Shown here piece after piece: positions 4,893 to 53,722 of a stretch of 64,000 nucleotides of DNA (position 1 is its first letter; each line of letters begins with the position of its first letter). Where the stretch lies: positions 180,023 to 244,022 of IMG/VR virus record IMGVR_UViG_3300043399_000297. One strand, 5' to 3'. Both the position numbers and the translations under genes were made by a program. The notes under the pieces were generated by a model. The model was not told the origin of the DNA. It searched no databases and was given only the letters and a program-made list of their open reading frames with translations.

Positions 4893-5552
4893 TTCCCAAC
4901 CCTTGACTGATTTGTAATATTTTGTGCGGTTGACCAAATTATAAATATTACTGGCTGAGGCACTGATGTAATTACAGAAATCGTATTTTGTCATGGTAAC
5001 TACTTCTTGAGTTTCTTTGTTTCTAAATGAATATAAAGTGTGATCATATTGGTGGTTACCGGCACCTGTTCTATTTCTACTTCTAGTCGCTCGTACTTCC
5101 GGAGAACTCATACGCTTCTTAAACGCCTCACGACTTTTTTGGCTTTTTGCAGGGTGTCTTTCACCCAAAGACAGCATTCTCTCGGATTGCAGTGTTCGGT
5201 ATTTTTCTAATTTGTTGTGACTGTTCTCGCCTGATATTCTTAGAATATGCTCTTCGGTATGCTTATATCCGCTACATCCGTCTCCACCGTCGGTGAGATT
5301 TCGTAGTATGCCGGTGTCATTATCTACTCTACCGTACCATCGTATCATCCGTCTTTCTAACGCAAACGCTCCGGTTTCGGTGAGATTTTGTTCAAGAAAT
5401 ACAATTCTTGAAAGGTCATCTGGAACCTTAAGTTTTCCGTGATTAGCAAACGCTCGGTTCCCGTTGCCTTTTCCTATGTAATAAGGGGTTCCTGCTTTAG
5501 CTGTAGTTGAGTCATTTTTTCGTAGATATGCGTAGACATAATAAATATTCAT
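4881..5552 (-). CDS. GIY-YIG-type free-standing homing endonuclease
   Basis: [33 protein letters not shown] followed by NUMOD3-like KHTEE. Confidence 0.8.
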
Positions 5553-5618
5553 GCTGATTCTCCTTAACAGAATTAGAGTGAGTAGGAATGCCAGTTCCGT
5601 GACTCACAACTATTTATA
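5541..5618. ncRNA. Conserved two-hairpin element copy A between convergent late promoters
   Basis: +ATAAATA 5541-5547; CTGATTCT-ccttaac-AGAATTAG; GTGAGT-A-GGAA-tgccag-TTCC-gTg-ACTCAC; -TATAAATA 5611-5618; homologous to three other copies. Confidence 0.75.
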
Positions 5619-5631
5619 CTAGGAGGTTATT

Positions 5632-5946
5632 ATCCGTTACTTATTGATTAGTTTCCTCAGAAAGATGGGTGGACAGATTGACGAAATGGTCAGTGTTGGC
5701 AAAAGAGTTCGTGATAGTGATAAGATCAATGCTAATGTCATTCTTGACTTTGCTGATAAAAAGATTATTAAGTGTATCATTGAGGGCAATGAACACGACT
5801 CTACCTTTGAGCAACTAAGAGATTATTATTATAAGGTCTATCCTAACTTAATTGATCAGTTAGAGCGTGAGGCTAATATTACTGCAATGCAAGAGCAGCC
5901 AATGAATAGACAGCAGCGTAGAGCGCAAGAAAGTAAAAAGAAGTAA
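5632..5946 (+). CDS. Hypothetical protein (start uncertain: ATC at 5632 or TTG at 5644)
   Basis: AGGAGG at 5621-5626; open frame IRYLLISFLRKMGGQIDE... Confidence 0.65.
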   Translation: MRYLLISFLRKMGGQIDEMVSVGKRVRDSDKINANVILDFADKKIIKCIIEGNEHDSTFEQLRDYYYKVYPNLIDQLEREANITAMQEQPMNRQQRRAQESKKK

Positions 5947-5970
5947 ATGGGGCTTTCGCCCCATTTACTT
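5941..5970. terminator. Bidirectional intrinsic terminator
   Basis: AAGTAAATGGGGC-TTTC-GCCCCATTTACTT between convergent genes. Confidence 0.8.
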
Positions 5971-6743
5971 TATGAATACATATTCAATATGTGTTCAATA
6001 ATTTCGTGACGCCTAATATCCTTATTAGTAAATTCACAAGATACCATACCTGGCACACGATACTCTATAATTTTAGATTTCAAATCTAATAATCCGTTGT
6101 CGGGAGTTTTTCTGTCGGTTTGTTCAACGTCGCCAGTAATGACAATCTTACTGCCCTCACCAATTCTTGTCATTAGCATTTTCATCTGACTAGGCGTTGC
6201 ATTCTGGGCTTCATCCAGAATAATCCAACTGTGCTTAAAGTTACGGCCTCTGCAAAAGGCTAGTGGGGTTATTTCAATAACTTGTTCATCTATCATATAC
6301 TCCAATTCTTTAGTTGAGTAAAACTCTTTCAAAACATCAAACAATGGTCTGACCCACGGTTCCATCTTTGAGTTCAAGTCGCCGGGTAAGAACCCGTGCT
6401 TTTCATCATCAACAGCAACCGCGGGTCTTGTTAGTAGAATCTTGTCACACTGACCACTACGCATAGCTTGAATTGCTGCAAGCATTGCAAGATATGTTTT
6501 ACCAGTTCCCGCAGGGCCACTCACCACGACTATATCTGTGTCAGGGTCAGTTAATGCGATTATATATTTTTCCTGATTTACCGATTGCGGTATTAGTTCG
6601 ATGGACTTTTTGGTCCTCTTGGGACTGGCTTGATTGAAGTCAATTGTCTTTGATTCATTACTATAGAAAGGTTTACTTTCATAATCTTTTTTCTGTGTGT
6701 ATCGTGTGTCTTTTCTTAGTGCGCTTGTTTTTCTCTTTGTCAA
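5970..6743 (-). CDS. phoH: PhoH-like ATPase
   Basis: GPAGTGKT, LTRPAV, GFLPG, RGRNF, DEAQN, GDVEQTD; likely TTG start at 6743 after AGGAGA. Confidence 0.92.
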   Translation of the reverse strand: MTKRKTSALRKDTRYTQKKDYESKPFYSNESKTIDFNQASPKRTKKSIELIPQSVNQEKYIIALTDPDTDIVVVSGPAGTGKTYLAMLAAIQAMRSGQCDKILLTRPAVAVDDEKHGFLPGDLNSKMEPWVRPLFDVLKEFYSTKELEYMIDEQVIEITPLAFCRGRNFKHSWIILDEAQNATPSQMKMLMTRIGEGSKIVITGDVEQTDRKTPDNGLLDLKSKIIEYRVPGMVSCEFTNKDIRRHEIIEHILNMYS

Positions 6744-6907
6744 GTATGGTCTCCTGATACCGTTTGAAAGCATTTGCTCTCAAACTTACTTAGATAGGGG
6801 ATAATGAGTAAACTATGAGTATGTGAAAAATAGTTTCCTATGATAAATATAAAGCTTATTGCTAAAGTTGTTTCCTTCTTATTATAGCTGGAGAGATAAA
6901 TACATAT

Positions 6908-7528
6908 ATGACTACTTTACCAGCAGATAAATTCTTTAACGATATTGACTTCGTTTCTATTGTAGATACTATCAAGGGTGTCTATATGAGCGACGGATCT
7001 ATGTCCACATTACTCGATTTTGAACGAGTATTAGATGAAGCCGACTTGTATGCCTTTAAAAATTGGATCGTCGGTGAATTAGTTGATGGTCCAGTTATCG
7101 GACGATACAATTGCAAATGCACATTCATGTGGCCATACAAGTTAATGCCAGACCCTAGAGGGGCATTACGTTTGGTAAACATAGGGTGCAAAGTTACATT
7201 TGGTAAAGGTAAAATCAAAGTTCCCGTTCAAGTTAAAGACTATGAAGACTTTGAGCCCGGTACAAGATATCCTAAGTGGAAAGAACATAAAGTTTGGTTC
7301 ATAGAGATTGTAGTACCTGCTGACTTAATGGATGACATTAAAGAAGGTTCTATTGATCTTGCTGACCAGTCTATTGACTTAAGTGAAATTGAAGACGCAT
7401 ACGATGAAGACCTAGACGATTCAACTAAAGAAGATGCAGGATCAGACACACAAGCAGAAGAAAATCAGCCACTAGGCGGAGCTCCTGGTGAAATGGCAGC
7501 GCCCGGTCCAGAAATGGGGATGATGTAA
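6908..7528 (+). CDS. Hypothetical late protein
   Basis: 206 aa; GATAAATA 5 nt upstream. Confidence 0.75.
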   Translation: MTTLPADKFFNDIDFVSIVDTIKGVYMSDGSMSTLLDFERVLDEADLYAFKNWIVGELVDGPVIGRYNCKCTFMWPYKLMPDPRGALRLVNIGCKVTFGKGKIKVPVQVKDYEDFEPGTRYPKWKEHKVWFIEIVVPADLMDDIKEGSIDLADQSIDLSEIEDAYDEDLDDSTKEDAGSDTQAEENQPLGGAPGEMAAPGPEMGMM

Positions 7529-7529
7529 T

Positions 7530-8054: not shown

Positions 8055-8056
8055 TT

Positions 8057-8563
8057 ATGTGGTTAGCTCAGCAAAATACTAGCGAGGAACTTCAATTAGT
8101 CGCAAGAAACGATGAACACGAAGAATCGATGACCGGAGATTTAAACTTTATGGCACAGGTACAGCAAAGAAATCAAGAAGCTAACCAACTTATGAATTTA
8201 AACAACGCCGCTTTAACTCAAGCTGGCGACAATGCTGCACAGAATGCAGATGTTTTGGTTGCGAATGACAACGAAGACTGGATCAACAAAAAATGGCGAC
8301 CAGCAATGGGCTGGATGTATATGGCAGTCTGTATTTGCGACTTCATTATTTTCCCCATACTATGGTCTATATTACAAGTCGTAAGCAAGGGTAGTGTAAC
8401 TACTCCCTGGCAACCAATTAGTTTGCAAGGTGCTGGGTTATTCCACGTTGCAATGGGTGCTGTCCTAGGTATCGCTGCATATGGTCGCACTAAGGAAAAA
8501 ATCGAAGGTGTAACTCAGGTTACCACTACAGTAAATTCTGCTCCTAGCACATCATTAAAATAA
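8057..8563 (+). CDS. Holin-like membrane protein (GTA 3TM holin family-like)
   Basis: KWRPAMGWMYMAVCICDFIIFPILW...GAVLGIAAYGRTKEK. Confidence 0.65.
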   Translation: MWLAQQNTSEELQLVARNDEHEESMTGDLNFMAQVQQRNQEANQLMNLNNAALTQAGDNAAQNADVLVANDNEDWINKKWRPAMGWMYMAVCICDFIIFPILWSILQVVSKGSVTTPWQPISLQGAGLFHVAMGAVLGIAAYGRTKEKIEGVTQVTTTVNSAPSTSLK

Positions 8564-8566
8564 TTC

Positions 8567-8595
8567 TTGACATTTAACATACTATGTGTTAAATA
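8567..8595 (+). promoter_or_regulatory. Sigma70-type promoter with overlapping inverted repeat
   Basis: TTGACA-N17-TAAATA; ATTTAACA-N7-TGTTAAAT at 8572-8594. Confidence 0.55.
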
Positions 8596-8600
8596 TGATT

Positions 8601-9401
8601 ATGGATCATTATAACACACTAGGTGTCCCCAAGGATGCCTCGCCAGATCAAATTAAAAAAGCATATCGTAAACTTGCAATGGAGCATCATCCTGACAAGG
8701 GAGGTGATGTTAGTAAGTTCCAAGAAATAACTAACGCATATGAAACATTAAGTGATCCTCAAAAGCGAGCAGAATACGACAACCCACAACAACATAATAT
8801 ATTCAACCAGCATCCGGGAGGGTTCAGCTTTAATGTAAATGGGTTCGATCTTGATGGATTATTCAGTCAGGTATTCGGCAGGGGCGGAGACTTTAGACAA
8901 CAACCTAGACAGCAGGTTTATAGAACAAAAGTTCAAGTATCATTATTAGATGCATATAATGGAAACGATCACACCCTACAATTAAATACCGGCAACGTGC
9001 AAAAAATAATCAACGTAAAAATTCCTTTGGGAGTGCAAACAGGAGAATCACTTAGGCTCGATAATGTAATTGATAACGCACAACTTATTGTTGAGTTTTA
9101 TGTGTTGCCGGATCATAGATTTGAAAGGCACGGAAATGATTTGTATTCAATACAACCAATATCAGTATTGGACCTAATAGTAGGGACGCAAGTAGATATT
9201 AATACTATCAATGGTAAAACATTAAAAATTACGATTAAGCCAGGAACGCAGCCCACACAACATATACGAGTTCCCGGATATGGAATGCCACTTAGAAATG
9301 GGACTTTTGGTGACCAAATACTATTGCTAAAACCCTTCGTTCCTGATAATATACCAACTGAAGTCATAGAGACTATCAAACAACACCAAATAAATACTTA
9401 A
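8601..9401 (+). CDS. dnaJ: DnaJ/CbpA-type co-chaperone (no Zn finger)
   Basis: J domain with HPD motif (MEHHPDKGG), G/F region, C-terminal DnaJ_C (FERHGNDL). Confidence 0.9.
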   Translation: MDHYNTLGVPKDASPDQIKKAYRKLAMEHHPDKGGDVSKFQEITNAYETLSDPQKRAEYDNPQQHNIFNQHPGGFSFNVNGFDLDGLFSQVFGRGGDFRQQPRQQVYRTKVQVSLLDAYNGNDHTLQLNTGNVQKIINVKIPLGVQTGESLRLDNVIDNAQLIVEFYVLPDHRFERHGNDLYSIQPISVLDLIVGTQVDINTINGKTLKITIKPGTQPTQHIRVPGYGMPLRNGTFGDQILLLKPFVPDNIPTEVIETIKQHQINT

Positions 9402-9413: not shown

Positions 9414-11681
9414 TTGCAATCCTCACCTGAAATTGAAAACATTATCGAACACGCTATTGAATCTGCTAAGCAGAGGCAGCACGAATATGTGACCGTAGAA
9501 CACCTACTACACGCATTGGTCAATCATCCTCCGTTTAAGAAGTGTCTTAATGGGTTTAACGTAGACACTGATATGATGATTCAAGAAATTGAAGCATATT
9601 TGGGTGGATTGCAGTCAATCGTTTCCAAGGAAGCAGGTATCCAGCCCAAGCGCACTAATACACTTGAGCGAGTTATTAATCGCAGTGTTACGCAGGTGTT
9701 GTTTACTGGTCGTAGGCAAGTAGCTACTATCGATCTTTATATGAGCATTGCTAGCGAAAACAATAGCCACGCTCACTATTTCCTTCTCAAGTATGGTGTG
9801 ATTAAGGGTGATTTTCTTGTTCACTGGCAGAAGACTTATAAGGGCGGAGACTATTCCGGCGGCATTACAGACAATCAAGCTGATGAAATCCTCGAAGAAT
9901 ATACAATCAATCTAACTGATTTGGCTCGCAATGAAAAGCTTGAGCCAGTGATTGGACGCACTAAGGAAATTGACGATATTATCAATGTTCTTGCTAAGCG
10001 TTTCAAGAGCAACGTATTGATGGTCGGCGACCCGGGCGTTGGTAAGACTGCTATTGCAGAAGGAATCGCCAACGCAATCGTAGAAGGCAATGTCCCTGAG
10101 TTCCTTGAGGGCTTTGAACTTTACAGTCTTGAAGTAGGTTCATTGCTTGCAGGTAGTCGTTATCGCGGCGACTTCGAAGAAAAGGTCAAGCAGGTCATCG
10201 ATGCGCTTAACGTAAAGAAGAAGGCTATCCTTTTCATTGACGAAGCACACACTATGCAGGGTGCAGGTGGAGCAAGTAATGGTGCAGTTGATTTTGCGAA
10301 TATGCTTAAGCCCGCCATCACTAAGGGCACATTGAAAGTAATCGCAAGCACGACTTGGGAAGAGTTCTATGAGAGCTTTGAGAAGGACCGTGCATTGATG
10401 CGCAGGTTCTATCGCGTAAGCGTTGATGAGCCTAGCCGTGACAGCACAGTGCGTATTCTTAAGGGTCTTGCAGTCAGGCTAAATGATTTCCACGAAGTCC
10501 ATATCACTGACGAGGCGGTCGAGGCCGCAGTAGATAATGCTGCCCGTTATATTCACGATAGAAAGAATCCTGACAAGAGTATCGACCTATTGGATGCTGC
10601 CTGTGCTAAGCAGAAGGTGCTTGGTCGCAAGGGAGTAGACATTACTAAGGAGTTGATCTTTGAGCAGGTCGAGAAGTTCACTGGTGTCCCGGCTGACAAG
10701 TTGAATGGCGATAATATGGATCGTGTTCAGAATCTTGAAATGAACGTAAAGAACAAGCTTTATGGTCAGGACGAAGTTGTTGACAAGGTTCTTGAACGTG
10801 TTTATGTTTCGTTTGCTGGTATCGGTAACGATACTAAGCCTATCGCAAGTTTCTTGTTCTTGGGCCCAACTGGCACGGGTAAAACAGAATTGGCTAAGCT
10901 ATTGTCCAAGAATTTGGATATGCCATTGCTTAAGTATGATATGAGTGAATATTCAGAAAAGCATAGCGTAAGTAGCTTGATCGGTCCGCCCCCGGGTTAT
11001 GTAGGCTTCGGCGATTCGCAGGTGCAGGGTGGACGTTTGATTTCAGACTTGAGCAAGAACCCTCATTCAATTCTACTCTTTGATGAAGTTGAGAAGGCGC
11101 ACCCCGATATCTTCAATATCTTCTTGCAGATTTTGGATGAGGGAACAGTTACTGGTTCAAATGGTAAGCAGGTATCTTGCAAGAATACTCTTATTATCTT
11201 GACTAGCAATCTTGGTAGTGCAGACAATGAACGCAACACTATCGGCTTCGGTGATCTTGAACGCACCGGTGAAGACGATAAGGCACTTAAGCAGTTCTTC
11301 AAGCCTGAGTTTAGAAATCGTCTTGATATGGTCTGTAAGTTCAACAAGCTTGATACGCTTTCTATCAAGAAGATCGTTATCAAGTTCGTAGAAGAACTTA
11401 AGAAGCCACTACTTGACAAGCACGATATCACTCTCAATCTTTCCGAAGAAGTTGTTGATCATCTTGCTAAGGTAGGATATGATAACAAGATGGGCGCTCG
11501 TCCTTTAGCTCGTAAGATTGACGAGTTGATTCGTGTTCCATTGTCAAAGAAGATTCTTTTTGAGCGTATCAACAATGCGAATGTGCTAGCAGTAATGGAT
11601 AACGAAGATGTTACGTTTGAAATTACTGTCAAGCAGAATGCAAGGATCGGTGATGACGGCATCATTCAAATTGAAAACTGA
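9414..11681 (+). CDS. clpA: ClpA/ClpB family AAA+ chaperone
   Basis: Clp N domain (EHLL), GDPGVGKT, LFIDEAH, GPTGTGKTE, LFDEVEKAH, PEFRNRLD, MGARPL; no ClpB M-domain. Confidence 0.9.
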   Translation: MQSSPEIENIIEHAIESAKQRQHEYVTVEHLLHALVNHPPFKKCLNGFNVDTDMMIQEIEAYLGGLQSIVSKEAGIQPKRTNTLERVINRSVTQVLFTGRRQVATIDLYMSIASENNSHAHYFLLKYGVIKGDFLVHWQKTYKGGDYSGGITDNQADEILEEYTINLTDLARNEKLEPVIGRTKEIDDIINVLAKRFKSNVLMVGDPGVGKTAIAEGIANAIVEGNVPEFLEGFELYSLEVGSLLAGSRYRGDFEEKVKQVIDALNVKKKAILFIDEAHTMQGAGGASNGAVDFANMLKPAITKGTLKVIASTTWEEFYESFEKDRALMRRFYRVSVDEPSRDSTVRILKGLAVRLNDFHEVHITDEAVEAAVDNAARYIHDRKNPDKSIDLLDAACAKQKVLGRKGVDITKELIFEQVEKFTGVPADKLNGDNMDRVQNLEMNVKNKLYGQDEVVDKVLERVYVSFAGIGNDTKPIASFLFLGPTGTGKTELAKLLSKNLDMPLLKYDMSEYSEKHSVSSLIGPPPGYVGFGDSQVQGGRLISDLSKNPHSILLFDEVEKAHPDIFNIFLQILDEGTVTGSNGKQVSCKNTLIILTSNLGSADNERNTIGFGDLERTGEDDKALKQFFKPEFRNRLDMVCKFNKLDTLSIKKIVIKFVEELKKPLLDKHDITLNLSEEVVDHLAKVGYDNKMGARPLARKIDELIRVPLSKKILFERINNANVLAVMDNEDVTFEITVKQNARIGDDGIIQIEN

Positions 11682-15573: not shown

Positions 15574-15585
15574 GTTTCTATAACT

Positions 15586-15615
15586 AGAAAGGGTTAACTT
15601 AAGTTAACCCTTTCT
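15586..15615. terminator. Perfect 30-bp palindrome / bidirectional terminator
   Basis: AGAAAGGGTTAACTTAAGTTAACCCTTTCT between convergent genes, followed by a T-run. Confidence 0.65.
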
Positions 15616-16222
15616 TTTTACAATGATCAAAGTGATGTTTTCTCATTCCGCCGGACATCCCTGTTTTGTTACAATGAGGACAAGTTACTATTTCTCTAGC
15701 CGGATTCTTATCACCTAACTTAGATGCTGATAAGTTGGCTCGCGTTTCATCCGTTCGCTTCTGTCCTTTTCCTCCTTTTGATATGAGGGCTTTAGACTCT
15801 TCCGAATGAGTTCTGCCGTAAAAGGGATTGTTATTCCCTTTATTTTTACCCCTCATGAATTCACTATGAAATCGGGCTGCTTCTGCTCTAATATCAGAAT
15901 AGTCATTATTGAATGTTCGTTGTTGTGTTCTACTCTGCGGATTACACATTCTAACCGCCGCGGCTAGCATCTTTCTTTTGGGTTCAATGTTATTAACCAT
16001 ATTAGGTAACAACAAATGAACTTCCAGATGTTCGTTTGCTGTTAGCCACACTAGATTGTCCGCAGTATTTTCTCCTCCCAATGATTTAGGAATAATATGG
16101 TGTCGTTCTACATAGCCTACGATAGCTTTTGCTTGTTTCCTAGATAGATAGCCAGGTGCTCTTGTATTTGCTATATCTACTATACGATAGTATTGTTTTG
16201 TATAATCAGTGTCATTAAACAT
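15599..16222 (-). CDS. HNH homing endonuclease with NUMOD3 repeats
   Basis: ERHHIIPKSLGG..NLVWLT..EH..H; NPFYGRTHSEES; terminal CPHC. Confidence 0.85.
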   Translation of the reverse strand: MFNDTDYTKQYYRIVDIANTRAPGYLSRKQAKAIVGYVERHHIIPKSLGGENTADNLVWLTANEHLEVHLLLPNMVNNIEPKRKMLAAAVRMCNPQSRTQQRTFNNDYSDIRAEAARFHSEFMRGKNKGNNNPFYGRTHSEESKALISKGGKGQKRTDETRANLSASKLGDKNPAREIVTCPHCNKTGMSGGMRKHHFDHCKKKGLT

Positions 16223-16226: not shown

Positions 16227-16282
16227 ACCTCAGCTTTATTTATACTATAGTAACAATATTCAAATAAAACATTGTGTGAGGT
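16227..16282 (-). promoter_or_regulatory. RBS-sequestering hairpin with embedded late promoter
   Basis: Minus strand ACCTCA...TATAAATA(16244-16237)...TGAGGT just before the ATG. Confidence 0.5.
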
Positions 16283-16337: not shown

Positions 16338-17723
16338 ATGAAAATTAAAGATATCTATGAAAGTACTACTAGTGGCGCTATCGCTACAGTAGCCTCTCCA
16401 ATGACCACACAATCTCGTAATGCTAGTATCTATGGTGGTAAGAAGGGCGGCAATCTACTTACTGGCACAAAAACTAAAAAGAAGTATGCTAACTCTATTT
16501 CAGAATCGCCAGCTACCGATAAGAGTAACTATTCGGTTGTAAAGGCAGAAGATCACAAGGGAAAGCCGTGTTTCAAAGTAGAATATAAAGGCAAGCCTGC
16601 GTTAAGCACTAGAATCTTTAGAACTAGAGAGGACGCTAATAAGGCGATTGCTAAGATGACAACTGTTAACGAAAGCAAGATGAAAGAGCTTTCTATGGAT
16701 CTTAAAGATATGGACAATGGCAATTTCAAAAAGAAATATGGCAAAAGCAAAGAACAAATGAGATTATCATTAGGTGATCCTGAATCAAAGAAGACGGTTC
16801 ACGAGGCACATCTAGAAGAAGATGATTCCAAGTATAAGCTGGCTAAATTTAATTACAAATCCAATCGGTTTGAACACCACAGTGATCACGACACTGCGGA
16901 TCAGGCCCGCACTGCGGCCCGGTCATTATTAGGCGGAAGACACGGTAATCAAATACGTATCACTGACCCAGCAGGAGAAAAGATTTCATTAAAAAAGAAG
17001 CCAGTAAAGGAAGCACATCTAGAAGAAGACGATTTGATTCTTGTGCCGGGGCAAGGTCATAAATTAAAGACAGGTTTTCATAAGTTTGATCCAGATAAAG
17101 CAGAACATGAGGGCGAAACATTAAAGAATAGTCTTAGAACTATTGCTCGCAATGCTAAAGAACTTCATAGTAGATTAGAAAATCACGATCAATTTCCAGA
17201 ATGGGTAAGTGAAAAGATTGGCACTATTAAGGGTATGATGACTAGTGTTACTGAATATCTCATTAGTCACCAAGAAGGTGATGCCCTAGATGAGCCAACT
17301 GAAATGGCAACTACAGCCGGCGTTATTGCAGGTGGCGGCGTTGGTGAGGCTGCTGACCCAATCGCAAAAAGAATCACTGTCAAAAAATGGGGCGGAAATG
17401 ACATGCATAGCTGGGCTGTTCTAGTCGACGGTAAGCCAGCAGTCACTGGATTGGGTAAGAACGAAGTCAACTATTACAAGAATATGGTAATGAAAAAATT
17501 ACGAGATAAGCCACATTTAACCGGAACTAATATTGAAGAAGCACAGACAATGAGCGGTGCATTAAAGAACACTCTCGCTAAAGCAGAGACTGGTTCTAAG
17601 CTAGATCAAAGTATCAAAAGACATAATGCTAATATCAAAGCCGGGCAATCTGGTACATTAAAGAATGCCCCAACTGGTTATCACTTTGATAGCAAGGGCT
17701 ATTGCAGATTGGGAGATAAGTGA
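16338..17723 (+). CDS. Putative internal head protein (modular, protease-processed)
   Basis: MKIKDIYE N-terminus; many (I/V/L)xE sites; GATAAATA upstream. Confidence 0.55.
   Translation: MKIKDIYESTTSGAIATVASPMTTQSRNASIYGGKKGGNLLTGTKTKKKYANSISESPATDKSNYSVVKAEDHKGKPCFKVEYKGKPALSTRIFRTREDANKAIAKMTTVNESKMKELSMDLKDMDNGNFKKKYGKSKEQMRLSLGDPESKKTVHEAHLEEDDSKYKLAKFNYKSNRFEHHSDHDTADQARTAARSLLGGRHGNQIRITDPAGEKISLKKKPVKEAHLEEDDLILVPGQGHKLKTGFHKFDPDKAEHEGETLKNSLRTIARNAKELHSRLENHDQFPEWVSEKIGTIKGMMTSVTEYLISHQEGDALDEPTEMATTAGVIAGGGVGEAADPIAKRITVKKWGGNDMHSWAVLVDGKPAVTGLGKNEVNYYKNMVMKKLRDKPHLTGTNIEEAQTMSGALKNTLAKAETGSKLDQSIKRHNANIKAGQSGTLKNAPTGYHFDSKGYCRLGDK
16806..17029 (+). repeat. 17-bp direct repeat GCACATCTAGAAGAAGA flanking a 69-codon module
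   Basis: Copies at 16806-16822 and 17013-17029, both encoding AHLEED. Confidence 0.8.
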
Positions 17724-17725
17724 GG

Positions 17726-18373
17726 TCACTTTGACTTACACTTGTCTCCGTGCCATCGCTTAAAGTTTGACGCTCCCTTACCGGAAGTTCCGCAATGTTC
17801 ACACTTCCAAAGTTGCTGGGATGGGTGAGTTCCGTTTTCTAACATTTCGCGGTTTCTTGCTTTATGGTAGCCTGCACCTTGCCAAGGATGAGTGCCGTTC
17901 TTTACGCGGTCACTAGCAACACTTGTTCCATCCGGCCTCTTTAAAAATGGATTAGTGCCATCTTTAACTCTATCACTAGTTCTACTAGTACCGTCGGCAC
18001 GCCTAAGAAAAGGATGAGTGCCGTTCTTAACTCTCTTTAAGTTTCGTTTAGTAGCAGCTTCTTTGTCTAAGAAATGATGGACGCCAGCCGCCAGCCTTTC
18101 GTATGCTGCCTTTCTTGACAATTCCGACTTTTCTTCCGGCGTTATTTGTATATGCCCGCTGATCTTTAAACAAGCGGACCAATCACCCTGTGAATAATGA
18201 ATGTCATAGTGTTCTTTGATAGATACCGCGATTAGATTATTAGGGTCATTATTTGAACGCTTACCGTCGATATGATGAATCTCATACTTTCTTCCGGTTT
18301 CGTCTTTCGGTATTTGACCATAATGATGTTCATATATTCTACGGTACTTGTCTGTACCACAATAAATACACAT
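17726..18373 (-). CDS. HNH endonuclease with GTHPF repeats
   Basis: YEIHHIDGKRSNNDPNNL..EHYDIH; repeated RVKNGTHPF; terminal CEHC..WHGDKCK; paralog of 53054-53653. Confidence 0.85.
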   Translation of the reverse strand: MCIYCGTDKYRRIYEHHYGQIPKDETGRKYEIHHIDGKRSNNDPNNLIAVSIKEHYDIHYSQGDWSACLKISGHIQITPEEKSELSRKAAYERLAAGVHHFLDKEAATKRNLKRVKNGTHPFLRRADGTSRTSDRVKDGTNPFLKRPDGTSVASDRVKNGTHPWQGAGYHKARNREMLENGTHPSQQLWKCEHCGTSGKGASNFKRWHGDKCKSK

Positions 18374-18448
18374 AGCTGATGCTCCTTGTAAGCGTTAGAG
18401 TAGTTGGGTATTACCAGTACCGTGAACTACATTATATTTCTATTTATA
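18362..18448. ncRNA. Conserved two-hairpin element copy B between convergent late promoters
   Basis: +ATAAATA 18362-18368; CTGATGCT-ccttgta-AGCGTTAG; GTAGTT-G-GGTA-ttaccag-TACC-gTg-AACTAC; -TATAAATA 18441-18448. Confidence 0.75.
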
Positions 18449-26685: not shown

Positions 26686-27270
26686 ATGCTCGGTGATGAA
26701 ATCTTAGTAGAATCTGCTGCCTCGGAATTAGCCAAAAAACTACCTAGTTTGGCTAAGCACGATTATGATACCATTGATAAACTTATGCGTAAAGTTGCAC
26801 AAAAGCATCATATTACTGGTAAGGCATTACACGACTTGTTTGTTAAAAAATACAAAAGAACTCCTGATACCTGGATTAAAAACAAGTTAGATGAAGTAGA
26901 TGTTGACATTGAAAATCTAGACATTCCTGACGAAGTGAATAAGTTTGCTGAATGGGCAATGCGTAGGGTTCATCTTAAGAATCCAATAAAAATTGAACTG
27001 AGTATGGACACAGAAGATGCTCAGCAAAATCATCATACTGGTAGGCACACTGAAGGTTCAGATACTATATGGGTTTATGCAAAGAACCGAAATTTAGTCG
27101 ATATCTTAAGAACAGTATTCCACGAAATTGTTCATTGTCGCCAAAGTGAACTGGGTATGATTCAGCCCGGCGATAGTTATCCCGGCAGTCCCATTGAAGC
27201 GATGGCTGATATGTTAGCTGGCAAGTATATCAAAATCTATGGCGAGAAGAACCATCACATATTTCAGTAA
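26686..27270 (+). CDS. Zincin-like metallopeptidase domain protein
   Basis: LRTVFHEIVHCRQ (HExxH) with downstream PIEAMAD; N-terminus ends ILVE. Confidence 0.65.
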   Translation: MLGDEILVESAASELAKKLPSLAKHDYDTIDKLMRKVAQKHHITGKALHDLFVKKYKRTPDTWIKNKLDEVDVDIENLDIPDEVNKFAEWAMRRVHLKNPIKIELSMDTEDAQQNHHTGRHTEGSDTIWVYAKNRNLVDILRTVFHEIVHCRQSELGMIQPGDSYPGSPIEAMADMLAGKYIKIYGEKNHHIFQ

Positions 27271-27922
27271 CTACTTCTTTCTTTTGTATATTCTTCCCGG
27301 AACATAATCCGGGGGACAGGTATCAGAAACAACAGAGAGGATACCGTTATTATACCACTTCATTCCGGTTGATCCGCGGGTCTTCTCTCTTTTCTTGCCA
27401 AACATAGGGTTTCCGGCCCCCTTCATTTTTTCGCTATGATCTGGACGTTTGGTTCCTCTTTTTAATTCCCGAGCTTTTCGTAGGTTTTCTAATCCTCGCC
27501 CTGTTATTTTCTTTCCTTTTTTTGCAATGCTAATTGCCTTTTTTCTTTCTTCAGTGTGAGGACCTTTAGGTACACCAAGTTGAGCTATACTTCTTGCACG
27601 ATTGGATTCTTCACTTTGTATCATTCCAGATACGCCATCGCCGCCGTCAGTGCGATTCTGTAATATGCCGGTACCTATATCTTTTCGACCGTGCCACTTA
27701 ATGTACCTCCTCTCTAGTGCGAATGCTCCTATTTCAGTCAATCCTGCTTCTAATATAATTACTCTAGAATAGTCAGATGGAGTTTTGAATTGTTCGTGTT
27801 TGTTATGTTTCCACCTTCTACCTTTTCCTTTACCAATATAATAAGGTGTTCCGTTTTTTTCGGATAAACGCATATACATAAAAACCATCAGGCTTGTTGG
27901 AATAGAAATAAATAGTGTTCAT
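27271..27922 (-). pseudogene. GIY-YIG-type homing endonuclease with a frameshift in an A7 run
   Basis: ATG 27922 gives MNTIYFYSNKPDGFYVYAFIRK; the catalytic [10 protein letters not shown] continues in another frame after A7 (plus-strand T7, 27854-27860). Confidence 0.7.
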
Positions 27923-27992
27923 CGCTGATACTCCGTTTCAGTATTAGAGAGAATGGGTATTACCAGTACCGCGATTCTCAACTATATTTATA
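27908..27992. ncRNA. Conserved two-hairpin element copy C between convergent late promoters
   Basis: +ATAAATA 27908-27914; CTGATACT-ccgtttc-AGTATTAG; GAGAAT-G-GGTA-ttaccag-TACC-gCg-ATTCTC; -TATAAATA 27985-27992. Confidence 0.75.
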
Positions 27993-50201: not shown

Positions 50202-50226
50202 CAACTGCTACTATATCGTGTAATAT
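50198..50226 (+). promoter_or_regulatory. Sigma70-type promoter
   Basis: TTGACA-N17-TAATAT. Confidence 0.6.
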
Positions 50227-50254
50227 GTCTATATATTAACAGACAGGATACCGC

Positions 50255-51545: not shown

Positions 51546-51723
51546 CAAGACTGAAAAAGCCCTCAAGCTTTATGATATTGTAGAACAATTCATTGAAGAT
51601 CAGGATATTTGGGGCGAGGAAAGCGTTTATCAATGCGACCGGGTAATTGAAAACGCATATGATTTTATTGCCCAACTATGCGATATCGTAGGATACCGAG
51701 AATTGGAGCCTGAGGATGACTGA
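51538..51723 (+). CDS. Hypothetical protein
   Basis: 61 aa, AAGGA SD. Confidence 0.65.
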   Translation: MTDKTEKALKLYDIVEQFIEDQDIWGEESVYQCDRVIENAYDFIAQLCDIVGYRELEPEDD

Positions 51724-52171
51724 ATTAGTAGCAAAACCAATCGTTAAAAACCAATTTTGGATCGTCACTGATGGTCACAAGAAAGTAGGTAATATTGAAG
51801 CAAACAATGCTGGTTATGGGGTGCAATTGAACGGAAATTTCCTGCAATTCAACAACACCGATGATCTAAAGAAAACCACAAAAATTAAGTTTGAGAGTAT
51901 TTCAGATACTATCAGCAAACCTACTCATCCATATCCAGAGTATCCTACTACGAAACGAGTATATAACAGTATACTTGATATTCAGCGTGGATTGCATCTG
52001 TTCACTAAAACTAAAAAGAGCAAGTGCCTTCACGCAGCCGGATATTATGTTATGGAGCAGAATAATGTTAAGCAAGTATTATTCTGTCCCAAGTATATCT
52101 TCATTCAGCGGTATCCATATCAAGGACCTTTTAAAACTGAATCAGAAGCACAGGCAGTGATAAATACTTGA
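51716..52171 (+). CDS. Hypothetical protein
   Basis: 151 aa, GAGG SD. Confidence 0.75.
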   Translation: MTELVAKPIVKNQFWIVTDGHKKVGNIEANNAGYGVQLNGNFLQFNNTDDLKKTTKIKFESISDTISKPTHPYPEYPTTKRVYNSILDIQRGLHLFTKTKKSKCLHAAGYYVMEQNNVKQVLFCPKYIFIQRYPYQGPFKTESEAQAVINT

Positions 52172-52377
52172 TGTTACATATTAAGCGTTTCATTGATAAG
52201 ATGGCTGTTGTAGAATCCAAGATGAATAAGGATGTGGTTCTGCCTATTAATGATGCTCGGGGATTACGTGACGATATCACTAGGTTGCTTGCTGATTTAC
52301 AAGAATTGAATGATAACTCAAAAAACAAAAACGATGACGTAATACAGATTGAAATTAAAGGCGGAACATTTAAATGA
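52171..52377 (+). CDS. Hypothetical protein
   Basis: GATAAATA just upstream. Confidence 0.7.
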   Translation: MLHIKRFIDKMAVVESKMNKDVVLPINDARGLRDDITRLLADLQELNDNSKNKNDDVIQIEIKGGTFK

Positions 52378-52673
52378 GCAGAACACAGCCAACTGTGTTG
52401 CTAGAATATGTTGATAAGAAAACATATAAGTGCGACCAAATTGTGGAGGCAGCAGGAATCTGGGCTGTGTTCTATGATGACCAGCCTATCAATCTCAAAT
52501 CAAGTCATTATCTTGCTAATGATGCTGCACCTAAATATAAGAAAACTAGTTTTTCTAATCCTGGACATGCAAGAAATCTATGTCGCAAGTTGAACGCACA
52601 GTTTAAAACTGATAAGTTCACTGTTGTCTTTATGAACTCGGGTAGAACAGTCTATCCTGATGACCTATCCTAA
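52374..52673 (+). CDS. Hypothetical protein
   Basis: 99 aa, ATGA overlap. Confidence 0.75.
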   Translation: MSRTQPTVLLEYVDKKTYKCDQIVEAAGIWAVFYDDQPINLKSSHYLANDAAPKYKKTSFSNPGHARNLCRKLNAQFKTDKFTVVFMNSGRTVYPDDLS

Positions 52674-53061
52674 AACCAAGACTGATATAATCAAACTCAT
52701 ACTTGATGAAGCCAAGGATAACCCAGACTTTCCTTGGAAGGATGTAGCGTCGGATAAGCTGATCTTTGACTGGTTTGTTACCGGCAGAGCAGGATCAGGA
52801 CTAAGACTTACTGATGCAGGAGCTAAAGCATTTGAGACTGCAAAGATAGCGCACTATGACTTTGACTTCACCCCTCCTAACAATACTAAGGGCGCTGCTA
52901 ACTGGGGAAGATATACTCTCATACTTGACAAAAAGGTCAAATGCCCTTACTATGTTGGCGTGGGTAAGAAACAACCTTACATTAGATTATACGACCATCG
53001 TACTGCGATGATGTTAACTCTTTATGGAGACCTTGAGAGTTATTTGGAATCTGTCAAGTGA
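52660..53061 (+). CDS. Hypothetical protein
   Basis: 133 aa; GLRLT..G pattern suggests a winged helix. Confidence 0.7.
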   Translation: MTYPKTKTDIIKLILDEAKDNPDFPWKDVASDKLIFDWFVTGRAGSGLRLTDAGAKAFETAKIAHYDFDFTPPNNTKGAANWGRYTLILDKKVKCPYYVGVGKKQPYIRLYDHRTAMMLTLYGDLESYLESVK

Positions 53062-53653
53062 CACGGTGCTTACAGCTATCACCGTGAAACCTAGTATAGT
53101 TTCCTCTCCCTTTGCCAATTTTACCACAATGTGGACAGGTCCACATTATTTGACTAGGTGCATGTGGCCCTGCAAATGGATGATTGCCGTTCTGTAATTG
53201 AGTATACACTGGGTTGGAATTACCGATAAAATGATGAGAGCCGCTTGCTAGTCGTCTTTGTGTAGTTGCTCTACTAATCTCGCCGCCCAGAAACGGATGA
53301 GTCCCTTCGATCACTCGTTTCTGACCGCTTCTGCGTTGAATCTCTCCTCCCAAAAAGTTATGAGTTCCGTTTTTTACCTGCTCTTTTGCGTTCCGACTAG
53401 CCAGGTCTGATATTTCTTTTGCAGTTAGTCCTAGTTTAAAACTCAGACGATGGCAGGCAGCCCAGTCACCTTGTGAATAATGAATGTCGTAATGCTCCTG
53501 CATTGATACTGCTTTGAGGTTTAAGGGAGAGTTATTTGAACGGTCGCCGTCGATATGATGAATATCATATGACCGACCTTGGTCATCTTTGGGAATAGGA
53601 CCATAGTGGTTTTCGTATATTTTGCGGTAATTGGTTTTTCTATAAATAGTCAT
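53054..53653 (-). CDS. HNH endonuclease with GTHPF repeats
   Basis: YDIHHIDGDRSNNSPLNL..EHYDIH; repeats NGTHNFLGG/EGTHPFLGG; CPHC..FHGDSCK. Confidence 0.85.
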   Translation of the reverse strand: MTIYRKTNYRKIYENHYGPIPKDDQGRSYDIHHIDGDRSNNSPLNLKAVSMQEHYDIHYSQGDWAACHRLSFKLGLTAKEISDLASRNAKEQVKNGTHNFLGGEIQRRSGQKRVIEGTHPFLGGEISRATTQRRLASGSHHFIGNSNPVYTQLQNGNHPFAGPHAPSQIMWTCPHCGKIGKGRGNYTRFHGDSCKHRVT

Positions 53654-53722
53654 CGCTGATGCTCCTTGTAAGCGTTAGAGTAGTTGGGAACGCCAATTCC
53701 GCGAACTACATCTTTATTTATC
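53641..53722. ncRNA. Conserved two-hairpin element copy D between convergent late promoters
   Basis: +TATAAATA 53641-53648; CTGATGCT-ccttgta-AGCGTTAG; GTAGTT-G-GGAA-cgccaa-TTCC-gCg-AACTAC; -GATAAATA 53715-53722. Confidence 0.75.

What the first reader, a model, noticed from the sequence alone, without database searches (positions are those of the whole stretch)
5541..53722. Four-copy covarying two-hairpin RNA between convergent late promoters, shared by HNH and GIY-YIG nucleases: candidate antisense control system
Seen: a ~56-nt element at 5553-5607, 18375-18430, 27924-27979 and 53655-53709. It always lies immediately upstream of a minus-strand nuclease ATG (two GIY-YIG, two HNH), and each nuclease is inserted antisense into a plus-strand operon. 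Hairpin 1 is CTGAT(T/G/A)CT-N7-AG(A/C/T)RTTAG. Hairpin 2 has compensatory stems (GTGAGT/ACTCAC, GTAGTT/AACTAC, GAGAAT/ATTCTC; GGAA/TTCC vs GGTA/TACC), an R-Y pair flanked by two invariant bulged Gs, and an RCCA loop. Most non-Watson-Crick positions are G-U on the PLUS strand but A-C on the nuclease mRNA strand (the loop-closing pair of copy D is an exception), so the selected fold appears to be the antisense one. A plus-strand ATAAATA is written into the first codons of each nuclease (MNIY, MCIY, MNTIY, MTIY), ending 6-10 nt before the element; a minus-strand (T/G)ATAAATA lies on the other side. Hairpin 1 displays the anti-SD CTCC(TT). Inference: a portable cassette in which a cis-antisense RNA limits expression of a toxic nuclease, possibly cross-silencing the family in trans, while its outward promoter restores transcription of the downstream gene. 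Alternatives: a nuclease-bound RNA, or an ssDNA hairpin with extrahelical bases acting as a mobility site. I do not recognise it as a described family.
Basis: partly seen in the sequence, partly recalled or inferred. Interest (0 to 1): 0.88.

Follow-up and report, generated by a model that had tools for sequence, protein, structure and literature searches.

The report
Antisense RNA cassette of phage nucleases
A portable ~100-bp control module sits in front of selfish DNA-cutting enzyme genes in hundreds of uncultured T4-like phages: two facing late-promoter motifs bracket a two-hairpin RNA that folds on the strand opposite the gene, it probably restrains those enzymes, and no RNA catalogue lists it.

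Summary
The four copies are the only ones in the window (covariance-model scores 78-95 bits; next best 16.6).

In 151 of 170 testable cases the element abuts the ATG of an intact minus-strand ORF. Where Pfam recognises that ORF it is a nuclease: several HNH types, GIY-YIG, TnsA-like, DUF559, PvuRts1I-like.

Covariation is strong (98.7% of cells paired; 12 of 19 pairs change on both sides). G-U pairs occur almost only on the plus strand: helix 1 has 159-171 against 0, or 99% against 78% pairing. The selected fold is therefore antisense to the nuclease mRNA.

Synonymous sites of codons 2-4 are constrained to spell the plus-strand late-promoter motif. This holds even where no plus-strand gene follows.

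Rfam 15, cultured phages and the literature gave no match.

Best reading: a mobile, IS10-like cis-antisense module for homing endonuclease genes. Repression itself is inferred, not shown.

The parts
4881..5552 (-). Nuclease A ORF (223 aa), GIY-YIG-like. Its 3' end overlaps the convergent clamp-loader gene 3969-4892.
   Evidence: No Pfam hit at E<=0.001. Weak PDB GIY-YIG match, E 0.095. 40-49% identical to many element-associated ORFs. Clamp loader identified.
5541..5547 (+). Copy A plus-strand ATAAATA late-promoter-like motif, written in codons 2-4 (N-I-Y). The predicted plus start is G5553.
   Evidence: Family-wide synonymous-site constraint. Spacing.
5554..5576 (+). Copy A hairpin 1: 8-bp stem, 7-nt loop, anti-SD CUCC at the stem-loop junction.
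5578..5607 (+). Copy A hairpin 2: 6-bp outer stem, an R-Y pair flanked by two bulged Gs, and an inner stem-loop.
5611..5618 (-). Copy A minus-strand TATAAATA, the predicted late promoter of the nuclease mRNA.
17726..18373 (-). Nuclease B ORF (215 aa), HNH_3.
   Evidence: E 2.9e-11.
18362..18368 (+). Copy B plus-strand ATAAATA in codons 2-4 (C-I-Y).
18376..18398 (+). Copy B hairpin 1, identical to that of copy D.
18400..18430 (+). Copy B hairpin 2. The outer stem equals D and the inner stem-loop equals C, so the copies are mosaic.
18441..18448 (-). Copy B minus-strand TATAAATA. Its 10-nt spacer is longer than the usual 3-5 nt.
27271..27922 (-). Nuclease C, GIY-YIG/NUMOD3-like. It is broken or recoded by a +1 frame change at the T7 (mRNA A7) run at 27854-27860. 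The ATG at 27922 opens a 30-codon frame, and the main frame runs 27271-27888.
   Evidence: The sequence is identical in two other assemblies.
27908..27914 (+). Copy C plus-strand ATAAATA (codons for T-I-Y in M-N-T-I-Y).
27925..27947 (+). Copy C hairpin 1.
27949..27979 (+). Copy C hairpin 2.
27985..27992 (-). Copy C minus-strand TATAAATA.
53054..53653 (-). Nuclease D ORF (199 aa), HNH_3.
   Evidence: E 6.3e-12.
53641..53648 (+). Copy D plus-strand TATAAATA in codons 2-4 (T-I-Y).
53656..53678 (+). Copy D hairpin 1.
53680..53709 (+). Copy D hairpin 2.
53715..53722 (-). Copy D minus-strand GATAAATA.

Best explanation
The element is the core of a mobile expression-control cassette for free-standing homing-endonuclease-type genes in uncultured T4-superfamily phages. 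Two T4-type late-promoter boxes, (N)ATAAATA, face each other across about 55-60 bp.

The leftward box drives the nuclease mRNA. Its predicted first base is the first base of hairpin 2', so the mRNA would carry a 5'-terminal hairpin followed by a weakly structured ribosome-binding region.

The rightward box is written into codons 2-4 of the nuclease. It would start an RNA at the G just before CUGAU. That RNA is complementary to the whole nuclease 5' UTR. It folds into hairpin 1, which is stable only on this strand because of its G-U pairs and shows the anti-SD CUCC beside an open 7-nt loop. It also folds into hairpin 2, which is followed by a U-rich tail.

I propose that this RNA pairs with the nuclease mRNA over the Shine-Dalgarno sequence. 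Together with head-on promoter interference, this would keep nuclease synthesis low, as RNA-OUT does for the IS10 transposase. Transcripts that read on can also serve a downstream plus-strand gene.

Shown: the architecture, its spread, its link to nuclease genes, strand-specific selection on the fold, and selection on both promoter motifs. Inferred: promoter activity, start sites, existence and length of the RNA, and repression.
For: Same architecture in about 190 distinct variants from about 200 IMG/VR contigs. 151 of 170 are followed by an intact ORF of at least 100 aa starting 1-2 nt away. The ORFs fall in HNH, HNH_3, HNH_5, GIY-YIG, TnsA-like, DUF559 and PvuRts1I-like families.

In an independent set 98.7% of cells are paired, 12 of 19 pairs change on both sides, and 0 of 500 shuffles reach the observed values.

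Strand test. Helix 1 forms standard pairs in 99.3% of cells on plus against 77-79% on minus, with G-U 159-171 against 0. The R-Y pair is G-C 74, G-U 22, A-U 10 and never A-C. Intermediates are always G-U on plus, for example C-G, U-G, U-A at pair 5-19. The plus strand has the lower MFE in 106 of 106 variants (-17.4 against -12.9 kcal/mol). Window copies give z -2.2 to -3.2 on plus against -1.0 to -1.3 on minus.

Promoters. Plus ATAAATA is perfect in 126 of 183 and 6 of 7 in another 52. The minus motif is perfect in 139 of 183. Spacing is fixed, and variants are not mutually compensated (2 of 56), so the two motifs are not a helix. Synonymous-site tests give p 6e-30 and 6e-59. The plus motif is kept where no plus gene follows. 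TATAAATA is enriched in the 7% of the window that is intergenic, 6 of 11, p 4e-5. The motif equals the T4, KVP40 and cyanophage late promoter, which lies about one helical turn upstream of the start (PMC2988020; PMC2984593). The window carries T4-type replication genes. The loop of plus hairpin 1 is 97% unpaired. 91% of copies have at least 5 T in the 8 nt after hairpin 2.
Against: There are no transcript data, so promoter activity, start sites and RNA length are predictions from motif and spacing. No gp55, gp33 or gp45 homologue was identified in the parts of the window that were scanned.

Both promoters are of the same late class, so the antisense RNA would not give temporal control, only dosage control.

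If the start prediction is right, the plus RNA stops 0-2 nt short of the AUG and covers the SD and spacer only.

The SD in the mRNA is itself only about 36% unpaired in silico, so some control may be intrinsic to the mRNA.

The U-rich tail is not independent evidence for termination, because ordinary late promoters in these contigs also have A-rich downstream spacers.

G-T wobbles are also tolerated in single-stranded DNA, so the strand test cannot separate RNA from ssDNA. Sequences in the alignments are related, so cell counts overstate the number of independent events.
Confidence: 0.5

Rival explanations
1. Outward-promoter patch. The plus-strand box and its structured 5' leader exist to re-start and stabilise transcription of the phage gene downstream of the inserted nuclease gene. 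A 5'-terminal stem-loop protects that mRNA. Any effect on the nuclease is incidental.
For: 43 of 70 cassettes lie antisense between two plus-strand genes, with a plus gene usually starting about 30-120 nt after the element. T4 is known to keep promoters for downstream genes inside seg and mob ORFs (PMC2988022). The predicted plus start leaves 0-1 unpaired nt before hairpin 1, the geometry of known 5' stabilisers (my knowledge). Plus-strand neighbours in the window include virion and holin genes.
Against: The plus motif is just as conserved where the right-hand neighbour is a large co-oriented minus-strand gene abutting the cassette (L002, L004, L010, L019, L048, L111). Copy D is followed by another TATAAATA at 53761 in front of the next gene. 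This reading does not explain why the leader must be the exact complement of the nuclease 5' UTR, or why hairpin 1 is nearly invariant.
Confidence: 0.2
2. Sense-strand 5' UTR. The hairpins act on the nuclease mRNA, with hairpin 2' as a 5' stabiliser and hairpin 1' as a weak RBS-occluding hairpin as in T4 I-TevI, segB and mobE. The plus-strand signals are by-products.
For: T4-family precedent (PMC2988022). Hairpin 2 forms on both strands, 98% against 95.6%. The SD is only about 36% unpaired in the modelled mRNA.
Against: Helix 1 has 159-171 G-U cells on plus and none on minus, and mean stability is -6.0 against -2.2 kcal/mol. The R-Y pair is never A-C on plus. The late box lies upstream of both hairpins rather than inside one, so the T4 early/late switch cannot operate. 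Synonymous-site constraint on the plus box is left unexplained.
Confidence: 0.1
3. DNA-level element. The conserved segment is a recombination or exchange site, analogous to PeSL cassettes or, as a single-stranded plus-strand hairpin with extrahelical Gs, to integron attC sites. It moves or swaps nuclease genes.
For: Near-identical cassettes precede unrelated nucleases: L203 and L232 share an identical 56 nt, and L172 (HNH) and L184 (GIY-like) share a cassette. The four window copies are mosaic. Cassettes with 11-13-codon relic leaders sit in front of other ORFs. G-T wobbles are compatible with ssDNA folding.
Against: Exchange by homologous recombination needs only sequence identity. It does not need compensatory stem changes or a G-U strand bias. 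No common recombinase accompanies the cassette, whose only gene is a nuclease from at least five families. No matching repeat lies at the 3' end of the nuclease genes, which abut or overlap the neighbouring gene. The element's edges coincide with the two predicted transcription starts.
Confidence: 0.1
4. Pure transcriptional device. Face-to-face promoters limit each other by polymerase collision, and hairpin 2 with its T-run acts as a terminator or insulator. No RNA-RNA pairing is involved.
For: The promoter boxes are only about 70 bp apart and convergent. 91% of copies have a T-rich tail after hairpin 2.
Against: This does not explain strand-specific selection on hairpin 1 or its near-invariant sequence. 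The T-rich tail is a general property of late-promoter spacers here. The simple terminator scan did not flag copies B and C.
Confidence: 0.1

Closest known systems
IS10/Tn10 RNA-OUT / RNA-IN (pOUT facing pIN); from my knowledge of the system
   Same: A mobile element's DNA-cleaving enzyme gene carries an outward-facing promoter just inside its 5' end, convergent with its own promoter. The short overlap covers the ribosome-binding region. The antisense product is a stable stem-loop RNA. The outward promoter can also read into neighbouring genes.
   Different: No sequence or Rfam relationship. Here there are two hairpins, T4-type late-promoter boxes, phage homing-endonuclease-type genes from several families rather than one transposase, and a predicted overlap that ends just short of the AUG. 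Nothing here has been shown experimentally.
T4-family homing-endonuclease regulation: late promoters, RBS-sequestering hairpins of I-TevI, I-TevII, I-TevIII, segB and Aeh1 mobE, and downstream-gene promoters embedded in seg and mob ORFs (Edgell, Gibb & Belfort 2010, PMC2988022)
   Same: Free-standing nuclease genes sit between conserved phage genes. A TATAAATA late promoter lies immediately upstream, a hairpin involves the SD, and a promoter lies inside the nuclease ORF.
   Different: In T4 the hairpin acts on the sense mRNA, and the late start lies inside it so late transcripts escape. Here the late box lies upstream of both hairpins and the SD hairpin is selected on the opposite strand. In T4 each gene has its own sequence. 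Here one conserved cassette serves many families.
PeSL mobile regulatory cassettes of T4-type phages (PMC2839356; PMC4122927)
   Same: Short composite stem-loop plus promoter motifs are repeated in a genome and mark the points where unrelated genes are exchanged.
   Different: PeSLs combine a terminator stem-loop with an early promoter and flank assorted ORFs in hyperplastic regions. This cassette uses two facing late-type boxes, has a different and far more conserved sequence, and is tied to nuclease genes (89% intact ORFs).
CfrI, the ~225-nt antisense RNA of cyanophage S-PM2 linking psbA and the homing endonuclease gene F-CphI (Millard et al. 2010, as summarised in PMC2984593 and PMC12197685)
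   Same: An antisense RNA associated with a homing endonuclease gene in a T4-like phage. Those phages use a NATAAATA late promoter.
   Different: CfrI is longer, specific to one locus (the psbA 3' end) and of a different sequence. It is not a repeated cassette shared by unrelated nucleases. No Rfam or BLAST relationship was found here.
Short cis-antisense repressors started from inside or next to the target's 5' end: SymR/SymE of E. coli (my knowledge) and P22 sar (68-69 nt, listed in PMC12197685)
   Same: A 60-80-nt antisense RNA covers the RBS of a potentially harmful gene, and its promoter sits close to or within the first codons.
   Different: Those are single-copy chromosomal or prophage loci. 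They are not mobile multi-family cassettes, use no late-promoter boxes, and have unrelated sequence and structure.

Membership tests
Any Rfam 15 family (including RNA-OUT, SymR, sar, c4, HEARO) | Covariance-model match at or near the family's gathering score | tested here: not met
   0 matches in the window at gathering thresholds. No match at the elements of L006, L021 or L030 at E<=1 with permissive filters.
IS10 RNA-OUT-type cis-antisense control | Outward promoter inside the 5' end of the enzyme gene, facing the gene's own promoter | tested here: met
   Met at motif level only. ATAAATA lies in codons 2-4 in 126 of 183 copies, with 52 more at 6 of 7, and under synonymous-site constraint. 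TATTTAT lies 3-5 nt beyond hairpin 2 in 139 of 183. Promoter activity was not measured.
IS10 RNA-OUT-type cis-antisense control | The antisense RNA is a stable, conserved stem-loop structure | tested here: met
   Two hairpins with 98.7% of cells paired and 12 of 19 pairs changed on both sides. The G-U bias places the fold on the antisense strand.
IS10 RNA-OUT-type cis-antisense control | Antisense RNA pairs with the mRNA over the RBS and start and lowers translation | not testable with these tools
   Complementarity is automatic for a cis-antisense RNA. The predicted overlap covers the SD and spacer but ends 0-2 nt before the AUG. No expression data are available.
T4-type RBS-sequestering hairpin switch (I-TevI, segB, mobE) | A very stable hairpin on the sense mRNA sequesters the SD | tested here: not met
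   On the mRNA strand helix 1 averages -2.2 kcal/mol and 77-79% standard pairs, against -6.0 kcal/mol and 99% on the other strand.
T4-type RBS-sequestering hairpin switch (I-TevI, segB, mobE) | The late promoter is placed so that late transcripts lack the 5' arm of the inhibitory hairpin | tested here: not met
   The minus-strand box lies 3-5 nt outside hairpin 2', upstream of both hairpins.
T4-type late promoter | An 8-bp TATAAATA box about one helical turn upstream of the start, with an A/T-rich segment downstream (PMC2988020) | tested here: inconclusive
   The motif, its fixed spacing and its intergenic enrichment (6 of 11 in 7% of the window, p 4e-5) all fit. No start-site data exist, and no gp55 or gp33 homologue was found in the ORFs scanned.
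PeSL mobile regulatory cassettes | Composite terminator stem-loop plus early (sigma-70-type) promoter | tested here: not met
   The boxes are of the late (TATAAATA) type. The sigma-70 scan gave only chance-level 9-of-12 matches in the region, 32 found against 37 expected.
PeSL mobile regulatory cassettes | Repeated in a genome and located at junctions where unrelated genes are exchanged | tested here: met
   Four copies in 64 kb and up to three per 10-kb locus. Identical or near-identical cassettes lie upstream of unrelated nucleases.
Intrinsic terminator (hairpin 2 on the plus strand) | G+C-rich hairpin immediately followed by a U run | tested here: inconclusive
   91% of copies have at least 5 T in the 8 nt starting 0-2 nt after the stem. 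The stem is interrupted and modest (about -9.9 kcal/mol). The tail is explained by the promoter complement, and the scan did not flag B or C.
Free-standing homing endonuclease genes (the associated ORFs) | HNH or GIY-YIG type catalytic domain plus a DNA-binding module, inserted between conserved phage genes | tested here: met
   Pfam hits among the 95 unique ORFs scanned: NUMOD3 29, HNH 14, HNH_5 6, HNH_3 5, GIY-YIG 5, plus TnsA-like, DUF559 and PvuRts1I-like. Copy A lies between the clamp loader and the next ORF, and copy C lies upstream of the PolB operon. Homing activity was not tested.

The most novel reading that the evidence does not exclude
The plus-strand RNA is a shared, trans-acting governor. 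Hairpin 1 with its anti-SD is almost invariant across unrelated nuclease families and across phages whose DNA polymerases are only about 35% identical. RNA from any one cassette could therefore silence every cassette-bearing nuclease gene in the cell, including those of a co-infecting phage. That would be an RNA-based truce, or an immunity device, in homing-endonuclease warfare. The hypervariable inner stem-loop of hairpin 2 would set cognate specificity by loop-loop kissing, as in plasmid incompatibility groups.
Probability: 0.15. Interest if true: 0.9.

Novelty: new variant of a known kind. Interest (0 to 1): 0.75.

Why it matters
Homing endonuclease genes are the commonest selfish elements of large lytic phages. 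How they are kept harmless is known only for a few T4 genes, each with its own sense-strand hairpin.

Here one compact, strongly conserved module serves at least five nuclease families in hundreds of uncultured phages. The comparative signal points to the antisense strand.

If the module works as proposed, it would be the first family-wide antisense RNA control system for phage homing endonucleases. It would also be an unusually clear case of G-U pairs being used to make a hairpin strand-specific, and of a promoter written into synonymous sites of the first codons.

It gives Rfam a new, well-supported family. It is a marker for finding nuclease cassettes in viral metagenomes. It is a directly testable model, because T4-type late promoters can be driven in T4-infected E. 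coli. It is also a candidate small bidirectional control part for phage engineering.

Tried and rejected
(1) Three collection scans were wasted on patterns with an off-by-one spacer. They returned only chance hits, plus L123 and L124. The corrected patterns are.

(2) A strict hairpin-2 pattern found only one contig because the loop is too variable.

(3) Hammerhead idea, prompted by CUGAUG. Rejected because the position that would have to be the invariant G8 varies among G, A and U, the GAAA core is absent, and Rfam gives no hit.

(4) The two promoter boxes as a closing helix of a three-way junction. Rejected because variants of one box are compensated in the other in only 2 of 56 cases.

(5) A plus-strand ORF starting at the ATG inside CTGATG. 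Rejected because that ATG is absent in about 40% of copies and has no SD.

(6) The RCCA loop as a conserved feature. It holds in only 19 of 106 relatives.

(7) The U-rich tail as independent evidence for a terminator. Ordinary late promoters in these contigs have the same A-rich spacer.

(8) Cultured relatives. There is no megablast or blastn match in 50,697 phage records. In 185,579 species genomes only 7 MAG contigs match, all phage-like.

(9) Literature. Searches by topic and by sequence string found no description.

(10) The T4 late-transcription genes (gp55, gp33, gp45) were looked for in 20 window ORFs. None was found. The rest of the window and of the roughly 244-kb genome was not scanned.

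(11) Single-linkage BLAST clustering of the nucleases lumped 154 of 166 together through shared DNA-binding modules, so it was useless for counting families. Pfam domains were used instead.

Full report
WHAT IS IN THE WINDOW

The four copies are real. In plus-strand orientation each reads as follows. ATAAATA comes first, followed by 6-10 nt that contain CAT, the start codon of a minus-strand ORF. Next is hairpin 1: stem CTGATNCT / AGNNTTAG around a 7-nt loop that begins CC. A single A follows. Then comes hairpin 2: a 6-bp outer stem, an R-Y pair flanked by two bulged Gs on the 3' side, and an inner stem-loop. After 3-10 nt comes TATTTAT(A/C).

A degenerate pattern finds exactly these four sites, against 0.04 expected. 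A covariance model built from relatives scores them 78-95 bits, and nothing else in the window exceeds 16.6 bits.

The adjoining minus-strand ORFs are as follows.
- B and D are HNH_3 proteins.
- A has no Pfam match and only a weak GIY-YIG match in the PDB, with E 0.095.
- C is related to A, carries NUMOD3, and is frameshifted at a T7 run.

All four ORFs lie antisense between plus-strand genes. Their 3' ends abut or overlap the convergent upstream gene, with no spacer and no terminator. Copy A sits between the clamp-loader gene and the next ORF. Copy C sits just upstream of a small regulator gene and the family-B DNA polymerase.

The polymerase is 42-47% identical to those of T4-superfamily jumbo phages. 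The window has no close relative among 50,697 deposited phage genomes.

THE ELEMENT IS A LARGE, UNCATALOGUED FAMILY

Every hit showed the full architecture, including both flanking motifs and hairpin 2, which were not part of the pattern.

The covariance model then found 102 more copies in the new loci, all scoring at least 59 bits. Together these give about 190 distinct 100-nt variants.

Some carrier contigs share replication genes with the window at only 28-42% amino-acid identity; the polymerase median is 35%. Locus G+C ranges from 0.31 to 0.46. The element itself is far better conserved than that.

Nothing matched in the other resources:
- Rfam 15 gives no match at gathering thresholds, or at E<=1 on three carrier loci.
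- blastn finds nothing in cultured phages.
- One genome per 185,579 bacterial and archaeal species yields only seven MAG contigs, all with phage-like genes.
- Literature searches by topic and by sequence string found no description.

LINK TO NUCLEASE GENES

A start codon lies 1-2 nt from CTGAT in 122 of 130 instances. An intact ORF of at least 100 aa follows in 151 of 170 testable cases. Most of the rest are frameshifts near the N-terminus, use GTG or TTG starts, or are short relic leaders in front of another ORF.

Pfam places the ORFs in HNH, HNH_3, HNH_5, HNH_4, GIY-YIG (including SegE- and T5orf172-like), TnsA-like, DUF559 and PvuRts1I-like families, often with NUMOD3.

Identical or near-identical cassettes precede unrelated nucleases. 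L203 and L232 share all 56 nt. L172 is an HNH and L184 is GIY-like. The four window copies are mosaics of each other. Dozens of homologous nuclease ORFs in the same loci lack the cassette, as does the HNH gene at 15599-16222 in the window. The cassette is therefore a module that has been exchanged among nuclease genes. No clear solo element was seen.

STRUCTURE, AND WHICH STRAND FOLDS

On the second set of 90 distinct sequences, 98.7% of cells form standard pairs against 82.6% in shuffles. Twelve of 19 pairs change on both sides. None of 500 shuffles reaches the observed values, and sliding the partners drops pairing to 27-48%.

Watson-Crick covariation cannot tell the strands apart, but wobble pairs can.
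- In helix 1 there are 159-171 G-U cells read on the plus strand and none read on the minus strand. Helix 1 forms standard pairs in 99.3% of cells on plus but in only 77-79% on the nuclease mRNA strand.
- With the 5' arm left free, the variants are CTGGTGCT/AGCATTAG, CTGGCACT/AGTGTTAG, CTAATACT/AGTATTAG and CTGAATCT/AGATTTAG. Every step passes through G-U on plus and never through A-C.
- The R-Y pair between the bulged Gs is G-C 74, G-U 22, A-U 10 and never A-C.
- Helix 2 forms on both strands (98% against 95.6%) with a milder plus bias.
- The plus strand has the lower MFE in 106 of 106 variants. The whole element gives -17.4 against -12.9 kcal/mol, and helix 1 gives -6.0 against -2.2.
- The window copies give z -2.2 to -3.2 on plus against -1.0 to -1.3 on minus.

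One caveat applies: G-T wobbles are also tolerated in single-stranded DNA, so this test does not by itself prove that the folded molecule is RNA.

THE TWO FLANKING MOTIFS BEHAVE AS PROMOTERS, NOT AS A HELIX OR A CODING ACCIDENT

The plus motif is a perfect ATAAATA in 126 of 183 variants and 6 of 7 in another 52. The minus motif is perfect in 139 of 183.

Spacing is tight. There are 6 nt (118 cases) or 7 nt (39 cases) from the plus box to CTGAT. There are mostly 5 nt (also 3 or 4) from the end of hairpin 2 to the minus box. Deviations in one box are matched in the other in only 2 of 56 cases, so the inverted repeat is not kept as a helix.

The plus box lies in codons 2-4 (M-x-I-Y), and synonymous sites are constrained to spell it:
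- Ile at codon 3 is ATT in 107 of 120 cases, against 39% in ORF bodies (p 6e-30).
- The third base of codon 2 is T in 154 of 166, against 33% (p 6e-59).
- Tyr at codon 4 is TAT in 124 of 136, against 74%.

Where the reading frame differs (M-Y-L..., M-N-T-I-Y), the box keeps its distance from the element rather than from the ATG.

TATAAATA is the T4 and KVP40 late promoter, and NATAAATA is that of T4-like cyanophages. It lies about one helical turn upstream of the start and is followed by an A/T-rich segment (PMC2988020; PMC2984593). In the window, 6 of 11 TATAAATA occurrences fall in the 7% of sequence that is intergenic (p 4e-5), correctly oriented upstream of ORFs.

With T4 spacing, both predicted starts fall on the outermost bases of the element: the G before CUGAU, and the G that opens hairpin 2'. 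The two RNAs would therefore overlap over exactly the nuclease 5' UTR. This step is an inference. No transcript data were available, and I did not find gp55, gp33 or gp45 homologues in the 20 ORFs I scanned.

WHAT THE PLUS-STRAND PROMOTER IS FOR

That fits the commonest layout, a nuclease antisense between two plus genes (43 of 70), and the T4 precedent of host promoters embedded in seg and mob ORFs (PMC2988022).

But in about 32 instances the right-hand neighbour is on the minus strand, co-oriented with the nuclease. Several of these are 400-700-aa genes abutting the cassette. There the plus box is conserved just as well: 22 strict, 6 loose and 4 absent, against 52, 15 and 5 where the neighbour is on the plus strand. 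A role independent of any downstream gene is therefore needed. The strand-specific fold of the RNA that would start there supplies one.

PROPOSED MECHANISM

The leftward late promoter would make a nuclease mRNA with a 5'-terminal hairpin and a weakly structured RBS. The SD is about 36% unpaired in silico, so it is not fully open.

The rightward late promoter would make an RNA complementary to the entire 5' UTR. Its hairpin 1 is stable only on this strand and displays CUCC beside a loop that is 97% unpaired. Its hairpin 2 is followed by a U-rich tail; 91% of copies have at least 5 T in 8 nt.

Pairing over the SD, probably helped by head-on promoter interference about 70 bp apart, would hold nuclease synthesis down. 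This is the logic of IS10 RNA-OUT, SymR/SymE or P22 sar. The G-U pairs would make hairpin 1 strong in the regulator and weak in the target.

Whether the RNA ends at hairpin 2 or continues is open. The U-rich tail is not independent evidence, because ordinary late promoters in these contigs also have A-rich spacers. I put 0.5 on this model as a whole. Confidence is higher for the architecture, the mobility and the antisense-strand fold, and lower for repression.

RIVALS

- An outward-promoter patch with a stabilising leader (0.2).
- A sense-strand 5' UTR device like those of T4 (0.1; contradicted by the wobble asymmetry and by the promoter position).
- A DNA-level exchange or ssDNA site (0.1; exchange clearly happens, but it does not need compensatory stems, and no common recombinase is present).
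- A purely transcriptional collision or terminator device (0.1; this does not explain hairpin 1).

COMPARISON WITH KNOWN SYSTEMS

The cassette works most like IS10 pOUT/RNA-OUT, but it is not a member of that or any other Rfam family.

It shares with T4 homing-endonuclease genes the late promoter, the involvement of the SD in a hairpin, and promoters inside the ORF. It fails the two defining features of the T4 hairpin switch.

It resembles PeSL cassettes in being a repeated promoter plus stem-loop module at exchange junctions (PMC2839356, PMC4122927), but it uses late-type boxes and is tied to nucleases.

CfrI of cyanophage S-PM2 shows that antisense RNAs against homing endonuclease genes exist in T4-like phages, but CfrI is a different, locus-specific RNA.

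I rate this a new variant of a known kind: a new, large RNA and cassette family within the class of cis-antisense controls of mobile-element enzymes.

Noticed in passing
window 27854-27860 (T7 run; A7 on the mRNA) within 27271-27922(-): Nuclease C changes frame at a homopolymer run. The ATG at 27922 opens only 30 codons, and the catalytic frame continues from 27888. The same sequence, with 0 mismatches over 655 nt, is present in contigs from two different IMG samples (L059 from 3300043399, L074 from 3300047548). A chance assembly error is therefore unlikely. It is either a pseudogene or depends on slippage for expression.
   Followed up: partly
L019:~1100-1194, L186:~1480-1580, L228:~8640-8740 (oriented as): In several relatives the cassette and an 11-13-codon M-x-I-Y leader end at a stop. 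A different ORF with its own start, and in L186 its own SD, follows a few bases later. These look like relics of cassette exchange, or like leader peptides. N-terminal frame breaks recur in at least 7 of 170 cassettes.
   Followed up: partly
window 15599-16222(-) with 16237-16244 and 15575-15612: A fifth nuclease gene (HNH/HNH_5 plus NUMOD3) has a minus-strand TATAAATA and a short SD leader but no two-hairpin element and no plus-strand box in its first codons. Its 3' end carries a perfect palindromic terminator-like hairpin. Homologues of this protein in other contigs do carry the cassette.
   Followed up: partly
window 53760-53790(+): A second plus-strand TATAAATA lies about 50 nt downstream of copy D. 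It is followed at once by a small hairpin (GCGGAAC...GTTCCGT) and then by the SD and ATG of the 53812 gene. That gene therefore has its own late-type promoter and 5' hairpin.
   Followed up: no
window 4881-4892, 17721-17728, 27268-27273, 53054-53061: All four cassette nucleases end within 0-12 nt of, or overlapping, the stop of the convergent upstream plus-strand gene, with no terminator between them. Each nuclease mRNA would run antisense into its neighbour, and the neighbour's mRNA would run antisense into the nuclease gene.
   Followed up: no
window 18376-18430, 27925-27979, 53656-53709: The copies are mosaic. B and D share an identical hairpin 1 and hairpin-2 outer stem. B and C share an identical hairpin-2 inner stem-loop. 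This suggests recombination among copies within one genome.
   Followed up: partly
window 9414-11681(+), 5970-6773(-), 8057-8563(+): The phage encodes a full-length ClpB/ClpA-type double AAA+ chaperone (755 aa), a PhoH-like ATPase on the minus strand, and a holin-like protein next to virion structural genes. Replication and virion genes are interleaved on the same strand.
   Followed up: no
L237-L243 (genome contigs): The only hits among 185,579 species genomes are seven contigs in metagenome-assembled genomes labelled Bacteroidetes, Haliscomenobacter, Luteolibacter and Nitrosomonadales. All carry the full cassette and phage-like genes. They are probably phage contigs binned with bacteria, which may hint at hosts or may simply be contamination of those MAGs.
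   Followed up: partly
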